A stretch of 64,000 nt of DNA, from assembly GCA_964252035.1 (NCBI GenBank), contig OZ176216.1; one strand, 5' to 3'. A program made the position numbers and the translations under genes. The notes under the pieces are model-generated. The model was not told the DNA's origin, did not search any database, and was given only the letters and a program-made list of their open reading frames with translations. The DNA is from Podarcis erhardii. Lineage: Eukaryota. Positions 21,870 to 29,603 of this stretch are shown piece after piece (positions within the stretch are counted from its first letter, which is position 1; every line of letters starts with the position of its first letter).

Positions 21870-23057
21870 CAGAATCCCTTAGCCAGGATTGATTAGATGT
21901 GGCAAATAAGGTGTTGAGTCCTGGAAAGGGATGTAGTTTTCCTAACAAGTGGAACGCAGCCACTTCATTTTCTGGCAGCCAGACCCATGGCATGGTCTTG
22001 CAAGCGGAGTGTTAAGATGACAGCTCGGTGTCCAAAGTAAACCTTCCATACCGAGTCAACTTTGGAATAGCCCAGATTTTCTGGCACAATACACTACTTC
22101 CACTGAGTCACCAGAAGGCCAGTCTTTTATTTGCCGTAACCAAATTGCGACCGACTGAGCCACGTTCTTCCCACAAGCCGGCAGCACTTGAGAAGCCCCC
22201 CTGTAACATGTGCCCAGCACAAACACAAATCTAAGGATGTGTAAACCTTTGTCCCTTCCTATCTGCAAACATTTCAGCTTTCCCACATGATGGCACCTTA
22301 CATAGGACTTTCCCCAGCCGTCTTGTTGGTTACCTGTTAGCAAGTAAGGCAAGTGATCAGGGTGGTTTTTGCAATCTGGAAGGGAGTTACTTTTTACTTC
22401 AGATGCTGATCATGCTGCACTGATTTACAGAGTAGGTAAATAGACTGTTAACACTTTTTTTTCTAGGCTAACTGTTAAGGTCAATGCCTAGACTGCTGTT
22501 TTGGCAGACAGCCTTGCTGTCCTCTTGCATCATCAAGCGACAGCCATCACTGCAGTGAGATCAGTGCTCCAGCTCTAGCATGTGCTGTGGTTCCCTGTCA
22601 TGGAGAGAGCATAGCTCAGTAGCTGAAAGGGATGTTGGAGCATTCCACCAGAAATGGAAACATTAGCAGAAATCGTCATAATTCACATGTTTCTCCAAGA
22701 TGAGGCATGAAAATCCTGCAAGTGAATGCAAACAGTATATGCTAGCATGGTTTTGAGTCCACAGTAACATTTATGGACTGGCTGGATGCAAAGGAGAGGT
22801 GGGAGGCACCAGCTGAGGAACCCCCAAGGGAATTTAAGGACTAGTGGGAATGCAATCTTATTGAGAATAAGATTTCTGGGGACTTCCTTATTGAGAATGC
22901 CTGCCGGAAGGAGAAAACGAGGTGCAAAGAGCCAGAAGAGCATTATTAGGACTCACAATTCCTCTAAAACAAAGAATCAGCAGAGAGCCAACGCCATCTT
23001 CCCTGGCTCAGAAACAGAGCGGGTTGAGGAAGCCAAGAAAACGGAGCAAATAGAACA

Positions 23058-24335
23058 GTGAATAACAACGTTGGGGCAACCTTACCCCCCCTTAAGGAGG
23101 ATGACAATGACCCGACCCCCCTCCTCCCAGAAAAAGCTAATCCGTCCAAGAGGGCAAGAGCAGGAGCAGGAGGGATTCCTCCCACTCCTAATGCTGACCC
23201 ACCCAGGCCTCTAGAACAAGATATTAGAGGAGCCTGCTTTCAACCGATTCCAGATACGCACCCCTACCAAGAGATTTGCATGTTGTCTGCAGAAACTATG
23301 GTTCTGGTTCTCCAAAGACTAAATGAAATCCTCACCAAAATAGTTAACATTGAAAAACAATTGGATACTAGCTCTTCCCCTTTAAATGCCCAAGGCCTTA
23401 AAAGGATGATAAGAAATGACTTTGTTAACAACTCACCAACTCAATCTATGGATGAAGTGAGGTCCTGTCAAGTCTTGCAAACGAACCAGATAATGCTTGA
23501 GATTCACCGATACACTCATAGGTGGATGAACCGCAGACAAATTACTATGTCCTTGTCTCAGCTCCTGAATTACCATTACCGAAATGTAGATCTAGAAAAT
23601 TTCCACTTCCTGCCTACCGTGAGAAACACCACGCGCCTATTTATGACCTTTAGGTCATCAGCCCTCCCATCTCGACTCATGGAGATAAAGGATACTCTAT
23701 GGTGGTTCCATTCTCTCCGCCCAGTGAGGGTATTTAAGGACGAAACAAGGAGGCAATTGGTCCCTTGCATAGAGTCAAAGCTAATGTGGATAAGGAAAAC
23801 CAAGCTCAACACTAGAAACACTAATTGCCCAAAGGAAAAAAAGGACTCTGTAAGCCTAGAAGTACAAGACCTGAAGAAGAGGCTAATGAGTATAAAGACT
23901 GAGATTTCTACCCAAAATATAAGGCCAGTAGAGCCTAGAGCACAATATTTAAAGACGTCCAACAGCTCTTTATCCCGTAGAAAGACATCAGTGCAACTCC
24001 CTGTTCCTTTTTCAAACGACACCGAATTAGATGAGGAATTTGGCACCTCCGACATTTCTATGGCAACAACCCCTAAAGAACTCTATGTTGCTGACAATCT
24101 GGAGATATCCAGCACCAAATCTACATCTGGACCTTTGCCTAATGTTCCAAAAACCTATCAGAATGATCAGCCTTCTCTACTGTACTCCTGGCGAGACAGG
24201 ATGGACAGATCTTCCGAAGCTGGTTCTTTGTTGGCCAGTGATCCACATTTTATAGCGCATACCTCATTAATACTCCCACAGCCACAGATAGAATCAACAA
24301 TCCTCCAATCAACCCAGGAGGGAGAGGGGGATTGA
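23058..24335 (+). CDS. L2 ORF1 (425 codons open); probable N-terminal part MPAGRRKRGAK... at 22897-23061 in another frame
   Basis: Long open frame directly upstream of ORF2 on the same strand. It has a Pro-rich N-part, a heptad-like segment (VLVLQRLNEILTKIVNIEKQL) and a low-complexity C-part. I recognise no named domain. Confidence 0.75.
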   Translation: MNNNVGATLPPLKEDDNDPTPLLPEKANPSKRARAGAGGIPPTPNADPPRPLEQDIRGACFQPIPDTHPYQEICMLSAETMVLVLQRLNEILTKIVNIEKQLDTSSSPLNAQGLKRMIRNDFVNNSPTQSMDEVRSCQVLQTNQIMLEIHRYTHRWMNRRQITMSLSQLLNYHYRNVDLENFHFLPTVRNTTRLFMTFRSSALPSRLMEIKDTLWWFHSLRPVRVFKDETRRQLVPCIESKLMWIRKTKLNTRNTNCPKEKKDSVSLEVQDLKKRLMSIKTEISTQNIRPVEPRAQYLKTSNSSLSRRKTSVQLPVPFSNDTELDEEFGTSDISMATTPKELYVADNLEISSTKSTSGPLPNVPKTYQNDQPSLLYSWRDRMDRSSEAGSLLASDPHFIAHTSLILPQPQIESTILQSTQEGEGD

Positions 24336-24341
24336 CAGTTA

Positions 24342-27300
24342 ATGAAACACCATGGGACTGTCCTCCCCACTTGGGGTGTGGTTGGTTGGGTTTTATCTTC
24401 TAGGGATACTTACCCTATCAAACCTCCACCTCTTCCCCATACCATTTTGACCCAGGAGTCCTGGCCCAAGGATGACTTGTTATTGAGGGGATGTTACCCC
24501 TCTACTGGGGAGGCTAGTATGGGGTCTGGGATTTCCACTATTGAAGGGCTAGGGAGGAATGGCGGTGGGGCTAAATATCTCTATTGGCAAAGGGTTTCGA
24601 GATGCAGTGATCCTCGAACCCCTTCCAATCTGCACCCCATCCCAAGGGATGAGGGTAGGGAGAGCAAGGATTACCCACCTCCATCATTGGTCCTGTGCAA
24701 TGCCAGGTCCATAGGCAACAAAACCGCCACCATGCGTGACTTTTTTGTCTCGCAGGGGATTGACCTGGCTTGCGTGATGGAGACCTGGGTATGGGAAGGC
24801 GAAGTAGTCTCCCTACATGAGATAACACCCCCAGGTTTCTCTGTCCTCCATCAATCACGGACTGTTGGTCGGGGGGGAGGAGTAGCGTTCTTAATCTGGG
24901 AGGATTGCTCTTTCAGAGCTCTGCAATCACCAGCGATCACCGGCATTGAATGTGTTGGTCTCGTGTGGGGCACCAAGGAGAGCTTGGCTGTCTGGCTGGT
25001 GTACCGACTACCCAGCACACTGGCAGCCACCCTGTCAGACCTGCTGGAGGTGGTGGCGGGCTGGGCCTTGGAATTCCCAAACCTACTGGTTTTGGGAGAC
25101 TTCAACGTCCATGCCAATGCTGCTCCCTCCTCACAGGCTCTGGACCTACTGACTTCCATGGCAACACTAGGGCTCTCCCCGTTTGTTTTGGGCCCCACTC
25201 ATCAAGCAGGCCACGCGCTAGAACTGATCTTTGGGGCTGGCATAGATGTGATCATGCTTCCCCCTGTGGAAGTGCCATGGTCTGATCACTACGCTCTGAA
25301 AGCCAAGATTGACTTCCCGCTCCTCCCCTGCTCAGGTGGCGAACCTATTTGGGCTCGTCCGCGAAAACAGATGGATCCTGATAGATTCCGACAAGCCTTG
25401 CGGGACCCTGCTCCTCCTGGTGACTCATTAGATGACCTTGTTGAGGACTGGAATAACCGGCTCTTGGCAGCCATTGATGAGATCGCGCCTAAGCGCCCTC
25501 TGCGACCCCGTCGAAACCAGGCCCCTTGGTTTACTGAGGAGCTCCGGAAAATGAAGCGGGATCTCAGACGGCTAGAGCGAGTATGGCGACGGACTCATGA
25601 CGGAGCCTCAAGAACATCTTATAGGACGCTTATGAAAGCCTATGAGATGGCTTTAAAAGCTGCTAAGAAATCTTACTTTGCAGCTTCCATTGCATCCGCT
25701 AGCTCTCGCCCGGCACAACTTTTTAGAATAATTAGGTCAATAACGTCCTTAGGAGGACAACCAAATTTAAGCACAAATTTGACCCACAGCTGTGAGGCAT
25801 TCGCGAGCTTTTTTGCAGAGAAAGTCCTGTTGCTACGCCATGACCTCCCTGCCAATTTAGATACAATTACTGAACTGGAGGCCCCTCGACTGACTTCAGG
25901 TCCAGTGTTGGACCATTTCGATCGGATGCTCCCTGCTGATGTGGATAGATTCCTCCAAGTTGGTAGGCCCACCACCTGCCTCCTTGATCCATGCCCATCT
26001 TGGCTGATTAGGGAGTGTCCAGATGTTGCGCAGACCCCCCTGGTTGAAATTATCAATTTGTCCCTTGACACAGGGACATTCCCAGGGGAACTGAAGGAAG
26101 CAGTAGTGTGTCCACTCTTAAAGAAAACTTCATTAGATCCCTTAGACCTATCCAATTACCGCCCAATTTCAAATCTTCCGTATCTGGGTAAGGTAATTGA
26201 GAGAGCAGTTGCTGAACAGCTTGGTAGGTTTCTGGAGGAAATATCGGCTTTAGAACCATTTCAGTCTGGTTTCCGTCCTGGTTTTGGGACCGAGACGGCT
26301 CTGGTTGCCCTAACAGATGACCTCTGTAGACAACTGGATCGAGGCGGGTCAGGACTGCTGTTCCTTTTAGATTTGTCAGCAGCCTTTGACAAGGTCGATC
26401 ATGATCTTCTGGACCACCGCCTCACAGACGTGGGGATACAGGGCATAGCCCGTAACTGGCTGTGCTCTTTTATCTCTGGTCGGGGACAGAGGGTGGCACT
26501 AGGGAGGGAAATGTCATTGCGCCATTCCTTGGTGTGTGGAGTGCCGCACTGCGCAATTCTCTCCCCAATGCTTTTTAACATCTTTATGCACCCCCTTGCC
26601 CAGATTATCCGGAGCTTTGGGCTGGGCTGTCACCAATATGCTGATGACACTCAGCTCTATCTGCTGATGGATGGCCACACCGACTCGGCCCCGAACACAC
26701 TGACCAGATGCTTGGAAGCTGTGGCTAGATGGTTTTGTGGGAGCTGATTGAAACTAAATCCTTCAAAGACAGAGGTCCTATGCCTGGGTCGGGATGGCAT
26801 GGGGATGAGGGACCAACTCCCTTCTCTTGGGGGGGCCCAATTAGTGCCATTGCCTTCTGTTACGAGTTTGGTTGTAATCCTTGACGCCTCCCTTTCCATG
26901 GAGGCGCAAGTTTCAGCAACAGCCAAGGCGACATTTTTCCACCTTCGCCACATCAAGCAGTTGGTCCCTTACCTTTCCCCCCCTGACCTGGCCACAATGA
27001 TCCATGCGATGGTCATCTCCAGGCTTGACTACTGTAATTCACTCTACGTGGGGCTGCCCTTGAAGCTGTCCCAGAAACTCCAGCGGGTGCAGAATGCTGC
27101 AGCGAGGCTCCTCACGGGGTCTCTGCCATGGGAGCATATTCACCCAGTGCTTTTCAAACTGCACTGGCTCCCGGTAGAGTACAGGGTCAGATTTAAGTTG
27201 CTGCTTTTGACCTTTAAAGCCCTTCATGAGACCGCCTCTCCCGGTATGCCCCACGGAGAGCATCAAGGTCCATAAATAGCAACACCCTAGTGGTCCCGGG

Positions 27301-27472
27301 CCCTAAGGAAGTTAGATTGGCTTCAACCAGAGCCAGGGCCTTTTCAACTCTGGCTCCGGCCTGGTGGAACGCTCTGCCTCATGAGACCAGGGCCCTGCAG
27401 GATCTGATTTCTTTCCGCAGGGCCTGTAAGACAGAGTTGTTCCGCCTGGCCTTTGGCTTGGAGCCAATTTGA
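24342..27472 (+). pseudogene. L2 ORF2 (endonuclease/reverse transcriptase), disrupted
   Basis: Open 24342-26744. In-frame TGA at 26745-26747. The same frame resumes (LKLNPSKTE...). A frameshift near 27228-27230 moves the C-terminus (DRLSRYAPRR...AFSTLAPAWWNALP...FRLAFGLEPI*) into the frame ending at 27472. The RT motif reads VPHCAILSP instead of the usual VPQG. Confidence 0.9.
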
Positions 27473-27668
27473 TTCCTCCCTCCCTCCCTCTCTTTCTTTT
27501 TTCTTTCCTTCTCCTCCTGCATTGAGGCTACATTTTATTTTAATGTTGTAATATTTTAATGTTGTGTTTTAATGTTGTTTTTAAGTTGTAATCATTCAAC
27601 TTGTTTTTATTATTGCTTGTAAGCCGCTCTGAGCCCGGCCTTGGCTGGGGAGGGCGGGGTATAAATAA

Positions 27669-27722
<54 letters not shown>

Positions 27723-29471: not shown

Positions 29472-29603
29472 NNNNNNNNNNNNNNNNNNNNNNNNNNNNN
29501 NNNNNNNNNNNNNNNNNNNNNNNNNNNNNNNNNNNNNNNNNNNNNNNNNNNNNNNNNNNNNNNNNNNNNNNNNNNNNNNNNNNNNNNNNNNNNNNNNNNN
29601 NNN
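29472..29603. other. Assembly gap (132 N)
   Basis: Run of N. Confidence 1.

What the first reader, a model, noticed from the sequence alone, without database searches (positions are those of the whole stretch)
24327..24350. L2 ORF1/ORF2 junction looks like a recoding signal: TGA-CAG-TTA-ATG
Seen: ORF1, its TGA (24333-35), CAG TTA and the ORF2 ATG (24342) are all in one frame, with no further stop until 26745. Known: stop followed by CARYYA is the tobacco mosaic virus-type read-through signal, and CAGTTA fits it exactly. The same bases hold TAATG (24340-44), the overlapping stop-start that couples ORF1 and ORF2 translation in the SART1 LINE. It would become the ORF1 stop if this copy gained one base, for example in the G5 run at 24326-30. 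Inference: this family may make ORF2 by read-through (a gag-pol-like fusion, which I do not know from vertebrate LINEs) or by termination-reinitiation. Caveats: a 6-mer can match by chance; TGA could be a CGA>TGA lesion in a single ORF; the true ORF2 start could be the ATG at 24519.
Basis: partly seen in the sequence, partly recalled or inferred. Interest (0 to 1): 0.75.

Follow-up and report, generated by a model that had tools for sequence, protein, structure and literature searches.

The report
Leaky in-frame stop joining LINE genes
In this wall-lizard L2 jumping gene, and in five distantly related reptile-type LINE lineages with the same kind of first gene, the first gene always ends in the leakiest stop signal (UGA then C) with the enzyme gene in the same reading frame, which suggests the enzyme is made by reading through the stop as retroviruses do.

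Summary
TGA (24333-35), CAG TTA and ATG (24342) lie in one frame, open to 26744.

TGA is the family's real ORF1 stop, not a lesion. All six copies I recovered carry it (window, Podarcis muralis, P. lilfordi, three Logan contigs). The window's second stop at 26745 is private.

I searched with the intact 520-aa ORF1, which matches no Pfam family and models as a helix plus an RRM-like domain. This found remote ORF1 relatives in other squamate LINEs. All five end ORF1 in TGA followed by C. In all five ORF2 follows in the same frame with no second stop. Four of the five have no AUG before the catalytic start of the endonuclease. Four of six hexamers are within one mismatch of CARYYA.

Best reading (about 0.6): ORF2 is made as an ORF1-ORF2 fusion by UGA-C read-through, gag-pol style. 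Main rival (0.25): reinitiation at AUG 24342. The TAATG stop-start idea is not supported, because TAA is out of frame in every copy.

I found no stimulatory RNA structure and no TURBS motif. Nothing was tested at the protein level. The scan had not noted this before on other DNA, and four full-text searches found no paper describing it.

The parts
22882..27719 (+). One 5'-truncated, dead copy of a lacertid L2-type LINE
   Evidence: The blastn alignments to L001, L003 and L004 all begin at window 22882, which is 99 nt inside their ORF1. The (ATT)17 tail ends at 27719. There is no second copy in the window. The closest proteins are from Podarcis at 81-92% identity.
23058..24332 (+). Open part of ORF1 (425 codons). 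The intact ORF1 is 520 aa. The window copy lacks the first 33 codons and has three stops between 22882 and 23057.
   Evidence: 92% identity to P0040 over 425 aa. No Pfam family matches.
23289..23369 (+). Predicted long helix of ORF1p (P0040 residues 171-197); a possible coiled coil
   Evidence: AlphaFold2 model, pLDDT about 78-85. Window coordinates were mapped from the alignment.
23469..23741 (+). Conserved RRM-like domain of ORF1p (P0040 residues 231-321, topology beta-alpha-beta-beta-alpha-beta)
   Evidence: pLDDT is 93-97. The top Foldseek hits are RRM domains at E about 1e-3, TM 0.63-0.66. This is the only block conserved among the 30 remote relatives.
24333..24335 (+). ORF1 stop codon TGA, in the context U-UGA-C; proposed leaky stop
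   Evidence: Present in 6 of 6 copies. The five remote lineages also end ORF1 in TGA followed by C.
24336..24341 (+). Hexamer CAGTTA, an exact match to CARYYA; it encodes Gln-Leu in a read-through product
   Evidence: Invariant in 6 of 6 copies. The related lineages have CAGATA, CAATCC and CTGTCA (one mismatch each), and CATAAT and CCCCCT.
24342..24344 (+). First ATG of ORF2, in frame and 6 nt after the stop; weak context (T at -3, A at +4)
   Evidence: Present in 4 of the 5 copies that reach it; L002 has ACG. It is followed at 24352 by an out-of-frame ATG in a strong context.
24342..24518 (+). 59-codon pre-endonuclease linker between the first ATG and Met60; open in all copies
   Evidence: Substitutions shared among copies are 5 non-synonymous to 1 synonymous, so no constraint is measurable. 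There is a weak resemblance to the N-terminus of an Anolis L2 ORF2 model.
24519..24521 (+). Second in-frame ATG (Met60), a possible alternative ORF2 start
   Evidence: ORF1-less relatives (P0001, P0005-P0007) start at or within about 15 codons upstream of this position.
24687..25332 (+). APE-type endonuclease domain of ORF2 (NARS...ETW type)
   Evidence: Pfam Exo_endo_phos, weak hit. Invariant columns in alignment A1.
26130..27275 (+). Reverse transcriptase and C-terminal part of ORF2, interrupted by a private stop
   Evidence: Pfam RVT_1 at 2.8e-26 on residues 597-797. The frame continues at 26748-27275.
26745..26747 (+). Private in-frame stop inside the RT. It serves as an internal control for what a copy-specific lesion looks like.
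   Evidence: L002 and L007 read a sense (Arg) codon at this site.
27669..27719 (+). (ATT)17 microsatellite 3' tail of the element
   Evidence: Tandem Repeats Finder, 100% matches.

Best explanation
TGA 24333-35 is the genuine ORF1 stop of a wall-lizard L2 family. Its ORF1 (a helix plus an RRM-like domain) belongs to a type shared with another clade of squamate LINEs. In this ORF1 group, ORF2 (endonuclease plus reverse transcriptase) is most likely translated as an ORF1-ORF2 fusion. A few percent of ribosomes would decode the leaky UGA-C, here reinforced by the TMV-like hexamer CAGUUA and a U at -1, with a near-cognate tRNA and continue in frame. This would set a low ORF2:ORF1 ratio in the way retroviral gag-pol does.

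Shown: the stop is shared family-wide; the frame relation, UGA-C and the lack of a second stop hold in 6 of 6 lineages; there is no AUG before the endonuclease N-terminus in 4 of 6.

Inferred: that read-through actually happens and that the fusion is the active enzyme. In the window's own family AUG 24342 could also allow some reinitiation. The window copy itself is dead.
For: 1. TGA is shared by 6 of 6 copies from at least three species, while the 26745 stop is private.
2. ORF1 proteins from separate contigs or loci end at the same residue. This holds for 4 Podarcis proteins, 3 proteins of the L011 lineage and 6 Gekko kuhli gene models.
3. The ORF1 relatives were found without any reference to the junction (whole-library E from 4.5e-13 to 5e-7).
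4. All five loci (L008 Anolis, L009, L010, L011, L012 Gekko) show TGA, C at +4, ORF2 in the ORF1 frame and no second stop.
5. Chance of the frame relation alone is (1/3)^5, about 0.004. Chance of C at +4 alone is about 1e-3 to 1e-4.
6. The first in-frame Met after the stop lies inside the endonuclease: codon 123 in L008, 85 in L009, 116 in L011 and 37 in L012. The WN..GW and QETW motifs lie before it, except in L012, where Met37 lies just before QETW, so only WN..GW would be lost.
7. The post-stop frames are intact for 1155 aa (L008) and 1130 aa (L009).
8. Out-of-frame ATGs follow the stop in L009, L011 and L012.
9. The linkers between the stop and the endonuclease vary from 9 to about 115 codons and cannot be aligned, yet the frame is kept.
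10. Four of six hexamers are within one mismatch of CARYYA. Given C at +4, the chance per hexamer is 0.078, and for four of six about 5e-4.
11. Literature: basal UGA-C read-through is 3-4% in mammalian cells, UGA-C is a rarely used terminator, and U-UGA-C was the most suppressible context under aminoglycosides (PMC4615788). UGA works with TMV-type CAAUUA-derived hexamers in mammalian systems (PMC13517186).
Against: - There is no protein, ribosome-profiling or reporter evidence.
- No significantly stable RNA structure lies 3' of the stop in any lineage (z from -1.5 to +1.6). Type I and UGA-C contexts do not need one.
- The window family and L010 both have an ATG exactly two codons after the stop, together with long pre-endonuclease linkers. 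That looks like a dedicated ORF2 start.
- ORF1-less L2 relatives make ORF2 from their own Met near position 24519.
- The six lineages share ancestry through ORF1, so they are not fully independent.
- The CARYYA hexamer is not invariant (CATAAT and CCCCCT occur).
- Constraint on 24342-24518 could not be shown.
- For L008, L009 and L010 only one copy each was read.
Confidence: 0.6

Rival explanations
1. Termination-reinitiation. Ribosomes finish ORF1 at UGA, the 40S subunit stays on the RNA and restarts at AUG 24342 six bases downstream. This would give separate ORF1p and ORF2p, as in SART1 (UAAUG) or the unconventional reinitiation of mammalian L1.
For: The AUG lies exactly 2 codons after the stop in 4 of the 5 copies that reach it. 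The unrelated-looking L010 lineage has the same spacing (TGA CCC CCT ATG). Both lineages have long linkers that start with this Met. There are precedents in LINEs (PMC5972666, PMC3894237).
Against: - This model does not explain why the frame, UGA and C at +4 are kept in 6 of 6 lineages.
- Four lineages have no AUG before the endonuclease core.
- TAATG is not an overlapping stop-start here, because TAA is out of the ORF1 frame in all copies.
- No UGGGA (TURBS motif 1) lies within 120 nt upstream.
- No significant downstream structure was found.
- The AUG has a weak context and is followed 10 nt later by an out-of-frame AUG in a strong context.
- ORF1 is long (520 codons), which disfavours ordinary reinitiation (PMC3894237).
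Confidence: 0.25
2. Independent initiation at AUG 24519 (Met60), by internal entry, shunting or a shorter transcript. In this model 24342-24518 is only spacer and the in-frame arrangement in this L2 family is incidental.
For: ORF1-less relatives begin at or just upstream of the Met60 equivalent (P0001, P0005-P0007). No purifying selection is measurable on 24342-24518. Anolis and Varanus L2 relatives have no ORF1 at all.
Against: - A 61-codon in-frame stretch with no stop has about a 0.06 chance of arising, and the other two frames close after 1 and 21 codons.
- ORF1 contains many AUGs, so leaky scanning is not possible.
- The Anolis L2 ORF2 model has an N-terminal extension of similar length with a weak shared motif.
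- This model does not account for the pattern in the five related lineages.
Confidence: 0.1
3. Chance or decay. The TGA is a lesion in a once-continuous ORF, or the hexamer and frame relation are coincidences in a dead copy.
For: The window copy is dead: it is 5' truncated, has stops in the first part of ORF1 and has a private stop at 26745. Any single hexamer match can arise by chance (1/512).
Against: TGA is in 6 of 6 copies and in intact 520-aa ORF1s. Five remote lineages have the same arrangement at the same domain boundary, with otherwise intact ORFs.
Confidence: 0.02
4. RNA editing. ADAR converts the A of UGA to inosine (read as UGG, Trp), as at the hepatitis delta amber/W site, and this joins the two ORFs.
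For: In the window and in L009 the stop lies in the 5' arm of a predicted 7-bp hairpin (TGACAGT...ACTGTC and TGACAGA...TCTGTCA). This model also needs ORF2 in frame.
Against: The stems are short and not significant against shuffles. No such stem is predicted in L010, L011 or L012. The model does not explain the invariant C at +4. RNA read depth at the junction was only about 2, so nothing could be read there.
Confidence: 0.03

Closest known systems
Retroviral gag-pol read-through (murine leukaemia virus UAG; Candida Tca2 gag-UGA-pol)
   Same: A structural, RNA-binding protein ORF is followed in frame by the enzyme ORF across a single stop. The expected outcome is a small fraction of fusion protein.
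   Different: MLV needs a pseudoknot 8 nt downstream, and none is detectable here. This is a non-LTR element with no protease to separate the fusion. Nothing has been tested at the protein level.
Alphavirus / type II read-through (UGA followed by C; Sindbis nsP3-nsP4)
   Same: UGA with C at +4 is the invariant feature in all six lineages. The polymerase lies downstream in frame.
   Different: The canonical type II triplets CGG or CUA are absent. The extended 3' stem-loop found in alphaviruses (PMC3159437) was not detected.
Tobamovirus type I signal (UAG CAA UUA, consensus CARYYA)
   Same: The window hexamer CAGUUA fits exactly. Three related lineages are one mismatch away.
   Different: The stop is UGA, not UAG. 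Two lineages do not fit (CAUAAU, CCCCCU). The host is a vertebrate rather than a plant, although CAAUUA-type hexamers do work with UGA in mammalian systems (PMC13517186).
SART1 UAAUG translational coupling and mammalian L1 termination-reinitiation
   Same: A LINE with ORF1 stop and ORF2 start very close together (6 nt here), on a bicistronic RNA.
   Different: The stop and start do not overlap, and TAA of TAATG is out of frame. No downstream structure was found. Mammalian L1 has a spacer of about 60 nt with two further in-frame stops, and no fusion protein is seen (PMC2241872). Most lineages here have no AUG at all.
L2/CR1-group LINEs with an esterase ORF1 (for example ZfL2-1)
   Same: ORF2 is L2-type: its endonuclease and RT are closest to lizard and fish L2-like proteins, and it has a microsatellite tail.
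   Different: ORF1 is not an esterase but a helix plus an RRM-like domain with no Pfam match. A 2026 survey found esterase to be the only identifiable ORF1 type in vertebrate L2 and CR1 (PMC13343379).

Membership tests
Programmed stop-codon read-through, type I (stop + CARYYA) | Downstream ORF in the same frame with no further stop | tested here: met
   the frame is open from 24336 to 26744. The same holds in 5 of 5 remote lineages.
Programmed stop-codon read-through, type I (stop + CARYYA) | Hexamer CARYYA directly 3' of the stop, kept in relatives | tested here: inconclusive
   The match is exact in the window family. CAGATA, CAATCC and CTGTCA are one mismatch away; CATAAT and CCCCCT do not fit. 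The motif is enriched but not invariant.
Programmed stop-codon read-through, type I (stop + CARYYA) | Measured read-through above background | not testable with these tools
   This needs reporters, tagged proteins, ribosome profiling or mass spectrometry.
Type II read-through (UGA-C, alphavirus-like) | UGA stop with C at +4 | tested here: met
   6 of 6 lineages.
Type II read-through (UGA-C, alphavirus-like) | CGG or CUA triplet and/or an extended 3' stem-loop | tested here: not met
   The triplets are CAG, CTG, CAG, CCC, CAT and CAA. Folds of 88-148 nt after the stop give z from -1.5 to +1.6 against shuffles.
Termination-reinitiation (SART1 UAAUG / calicivirus TURBS type) | Overlapping or adjacent stop and start, with the stop in the ORF1 frame | tested here: not met
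   TAA of TAATG is out of the ORF1 frame in all six copies. The real stop, TGA, is 6 nt before the ATG. Four related lineages have no nearby in-frame ATG.
Termination-reinitiation (SART1 UAAUG / calicivirus TURBS type) | Upstream 18S-complementary motif (UGGGA) or a required downstream structure | tested here: not met
   No TGGGA occurs within 120 nt upstream in any lineage. No significant structure was found. Weaker complementarity was not examined.
L2 clade of LINEs | ORF2 with an APE endonuclease and RT closest to L2 elements; microsatellite 3' tail | tested here: met
   Pfam RVT_1 and Exo_endo_phos. The nearest proteins are lizard and fish L2-like ORF2s. The tail is (ATT)17. No RT phylogeny against reference clades was made.
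L2 clade of LINEs | Esterase-type ORF1, or no ORF1 | tested here: not met
   ORF1 is present, has no Pfam hit, and models as a helix plus an RRM-like fold.
L1-like (type II) ORF1p: coiled coil + RRM + CTD | Sequence match to Transposase_22 or the L1 ORF1p RRM/CTD | tested here: not met
   No Pfam match for P0040 or for nine relatives. The resemblance is at fold level only, to generic RRMs at E about 1e-3.

The most novel reading that the evidence does not exclude
A group of squamate LINEs has two unrelated ORF2 clades that share one RRM-type ORF1. This group makes its endonuclease/RT only as an ORF1-ORF2 fusion, through read-through of a conserved UGA-C. That would be a gag-pol-type expression strategy not described for LINEs. 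The ORF1 module may have moved between clades together with its leaky stop, as a cassette.
Probability: 0.45. Interest if true: 0.8.

Novelty: new variant of a known kind. Interest (0 to 1): 0.7.

Why it matters
How LINEs translate ORF2 from a bicistronic RNA is a long-standing open question. The proposals so far are reinitiation, internal entry and 2A skipping (PMC3894237). A conserved in-frame UGA-C with no AUG for ORF2 would add a fourth route, borrowed in principle from retroviruses. It would also make the question directly testable with intact natural elements such as the Anolis and ENA copies. It implies that the active enzyme is tethered to ORF1p, which bears on cis-preference and on RNP assembly. 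It also matters for annotation: gene callers truncate these ORF2s at an internal Met, which removes catalytic endonuclease residues. If lizard LINEs now being developed as gene-insertion tools prove to have this anatomy, their upstream region may deserve a second look; this link is untested.

Tried and rejected
- Other copies inside the window: none.
- Rfam on 20-30 kb of the window: nothing.
- Word-indexed protein search with ORF1 found only its own cluster. The same search with the 16-sequence profile again found only P0040.
- Read laying on three DNA contig sets and one RNA run gave a steep 5'-truncation depth profile. It listed no majority difference between 24258 and 24588. Only the best-supported differences are printed, and RNA depth at the junction was about 2, so this is weak support only.
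- RNA folding around the stop in six lineages found nothing beyond shuffles.
- The dN/dS-style count on substitutions shared among copies had too few sites (5 non-synonymous to 1 synonymous in 24342-24518). Part of the ORF1 alignment was also contaminated by non-homologous flanks.
- The Anolis L2 locus L005 looks 5'-truncated or fused to another repeat just before its annotated Met, so it says nothing about an ancestral junction.
- The clade of the L008-L012 ORF2s was not settled. Their RT is nearer to L1 ORF2p than the window's L2 RT is, but the endonuclease did not align. Vingi was considered but not tested.
- Four full-text searches found no paper describing read-through between LINE ORFs. 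The SART1 paper itself is not held.
- A 2A (NPGP) motif in the ORF2 N-terminus was looked for by eye and is absent.
Full report
**1. What is in the window**

The finding sits inside one LINE copy on the + strand.
- Alignments to three related contigs all begin at window 22882, which is 99 nt inside their ORF1. The copy is therefore 5' truncated.
- It ends in a perfect (ATT)17 tail at 27669-27719.
- ORF1 is open from 23058 to the TGA at 24333-35. ORF2 runs from ATG 24342 to an in-frame stop at 26745-47 and then continues in the same frame to about 27275.
- Pfam finds RVT_1 (2.8e-26) and a weak Exo_endo_phos match in ORF2, and nothing in ORF1.
- The closest proteins are from Podarcis wall lizards at 81-92% identity. 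ORF2 is of the L2 kind (NARS...ETW endonuclease; lizard and fish L2-like relatives).
- The window holds no second copy. The N run at 29472-29603 was left alone.

**2.

The letters are exactly as described: G5, GAT, TGA, CAG TTA, ATG, with TAATG at 24340-44. ORF1 and ORF2 are in one frame. CAGTTA fits CARYYA at all six positions; the chance for one hexamer is 1/512.

**3. TGA is the family's real stop**

I recovered five more copies that reach the junction:
- three Logan contigs (L001, L003, L004);
- one Podarcis lilfordi locus (L002);
- one P. muralis locus (L007).

All five carry TGA CAG TTA. L007 has a synonymous GAC before the stop. L002, a decayed copy, has ACG in place of ATG.

An intact 520-aa ORF1 exists on two contigs (P0040 and P0042). 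Four proteins of that cluster end at the same residue.

The window's other stop gives an internal control. At 26745 the two other copies that cover the site read a sense codon, so that stop is private to this copy. The TGA at 24333 is not private.

The copies differ by only about 5%. The identical 20-nt junction therefore shows the state of their common source, not selection on the junction itself.

Laying contigs of three lacertid runs on the element listed no majority difference between 24258 and 24588. That table is truncated, so this is weak support only.

**4. The decisive comparison**

The word-indexed search found no ORF1 relatives outside the family's own cluster. I therefore ran the exhaustive representative search with the intact ORF1. 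It returned 30 proteins.
- They share one core of about 90 residues, with invariant Trp, Leu-Pro, Phe and Val-Phe columns.
- Whole-library E-values go down to 4.5e-13.
- None has a Pfam match.
- The named ones come from Anolis carolinensis, Hemicordylus capensis and Gekko kuhli.

I fetched five loci. The gecko was chosen for its chromosome context and taxon.

| Locus | Source | After ORF1 | Start of endonuclease | First in-frame Met after stop |
|---|---|---|---|---|
| L008 | Anolis | TGA CTG TCA | ~22 codons on (IVTWNVAGW) | codon 123 |
| L009 | ENA assembly | TGA CAG ATA | ~9 codons on | codon 85 |
| L011 | Logan | TGA CAT AAT | ~12 codons on | codon 116 |
| L012 | Gekko | TGA CAA TCC | ~9 codons on | codon 37 |
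| L010 | ENA assembly | TGA CCC CCT ATG | after a ~95-codon linker | codon 3 |

In every locus ORF2 is in the ORF1 frame and there is no second stop. The post-stop frames are intact for 1155 aa (L008) and 1130 aa (L009).

In four lineages, an ORF2 beginning at its first Met would lack endonuclease N-terminal motifs. It would lack WN..GW in all four, and also QETW in L008, L009 and L011. These correspond to residues known to be essential in L1 endonuclease (established knowledge).

The stop is also shared within lineages. Six Gekko gene models at different loci end at the same residue, and so do three contigs of the L011 lineage.

These ORF2s are only 30-38% identical to one another. They match the window's L2 ORF2 only in the RT, at about 26%. 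The same ORF1 type therefore serves at least two ORF2 clades.

**5. Weighing chance**

Including the window family, six of six lineages have:
- ORF2 in frame, with chance (1/3)^5, about 0.004, given the first;
- UGA as the stop;
- C at +4, with chance about 1e-3 to 1e-4.

According to the literature, UGA-C is a rarely used terminator in mammals and the leakiest tetranucleotide, with 3-4% basal read-through (PMC4615788).

Four of the six hexamers are within one mismatch of CARYYA. Given C at +4, the chance per hexamer is 10/128, and for four of six about 5e-4.

The lineages are related through ORF1, so these figures are upper bounds on significance. However, the tails and linkers on either side of the stop cannot be aligned, and they range from 9 to about 115 codons. 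Many insertions and deletions have therefore occurred without ever breaking the frame. Reinitiation or internal entry puts no constraint on frame. Read-through does.

**6. What argues the other way**

- Folding 88-148 nt after the stop gives nothing beyond shuffled controls in any lineage (z from -1.5 to +1.6). There is therefore no MLV- or alphavirus-style stimulator. Type I and plain UGA-C contexts do not require one (PMC13517186, PMC4615788).
- No UGGGA motif lies upstream.
- The window family and L010 share an ATG exactly two codons after the stop, together with long linkers. That is unlikely by chance (of the order of 0.01) and leaves room for coupled reinitiation in those two lineages.
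- The ATG at 24342 has a weak context. It is followed 10 nt later by an out-of-frame ATG in a strong context.
- ORF1-less L2 relatives in Podarcis, Anolis and Varanus start ORF2 at or near the Met60 equivalent (24519). That start cannot be excluded either.
- Selection on 24342-24518 could not be measured.

**7. ORF1 itself**

An AlphaFold2 model built on 16 sequences is poor overall (mean pLDDT 56). It is confident for a helix at residues 171-197. It is very confident (93-97) for a beta-alpha-beta-beta-alpha-beta domain at residues 231-321. The best Foldseek matches to that domain are RRM domains (E about 1e-3, TM about 0.65).

This resembles the layout of L1-type ORF1p, with no sequence match to it. 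It contrasts with the esterase ORF1 reported as the only identifiable type in vertebrate L2 and CR1 (PMC13343379).

**8. Verdict**

The lesion caveat is refuted. The TAATG stop-start idea is not supported.

The read-through idea is strengthened well beyond the single hexamer. The conserved signal is UGA-C in frame, usually with a CARYYA-like hexamer. I put read-through at about 0.6, reinitiation at AUG 24342 at 0.25, a start at 24519 at 0.1, and chance or editing at a few percent.

Read-through as a mechanism is well known. Its use between the two ORFs of a LINE was not found in four full-text searches, although subscription papers and Repbase notes are outside the library. I therefore rate it a new variant of a known kind.

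Noticed in passing
window 23058-24332; P0040; L008-L012: The ORF1 of this L2 family is not the esterase type reported for vertebrate L2/CR1. It is a helix plus an RRM-like domain with no Pfam family. Its only detectable relatives are ORF1s of a different squamate LINE clade. This points to exchange of the ORF1 module between LINE clades.
   Followed up: partly
L008:7001-11914 (Anolis carolinensis): An apparently intact Anolis LINE has ORF1 (481 aa), TGA, and a 1155-codon ORF2 frame with no AUG before the endonuclease core. The genome annotation files its ORF1 as an isoform of a ras-GEF gene and starts ORF2 at an internal Met. A 2026 review calls the Anolis element Vingi-1 a single-ORF LINE whose native 5' UTR is kept in gene-writing constructs (PMC13708176). 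Whether L008 is a Vingi element was not tested.
   Followed up: no
window 26745-26747: The in-frame stop inside the RT is private to this copy. It is a transition at a CpG site; two other copies read Arg there.
   Followed up: yes
window 24334-24362; L009:2140-2178: In the window family and in L009 the stop codon lies in the 5' arm of a predicted 7-bp hairpin (GACAGTT/ACTGTC and TGACAGA/TCTGTCA). The hairpin is not significant against shuffles and is absent in the other lineages.
   Followed up: partly
window 24349-24355: An out-of-frame ATG in a near-optimal context (caccATGg) lies 10 nt after the weak-context ORF2 ATG and opens a 31-codon frame. It would trap scanning ribosomes.
   Followed up: partly
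window 23000-27300: Read and contig depth rises several hundred-fold from the ORF1 region to the 3' end in three lacertid read sets. This is the classic 5'-truncation profile, so full-length copies with the junction are a small minority of the family. The family's words occur in runs of at least nine organism labels.
   Followed up: partly
P0060 cluster (11 Logan proteins, 189-230 aa): A second, more divergent ORF1 group is 58% identical to residues 169-381 of the intact ORF1. It may be a sister L2 subfamily and would be the best next test of the junction.
   Followed up: no
window 29472-29603: A run of 132 N (assembly gap or masked).
   Followed up: no
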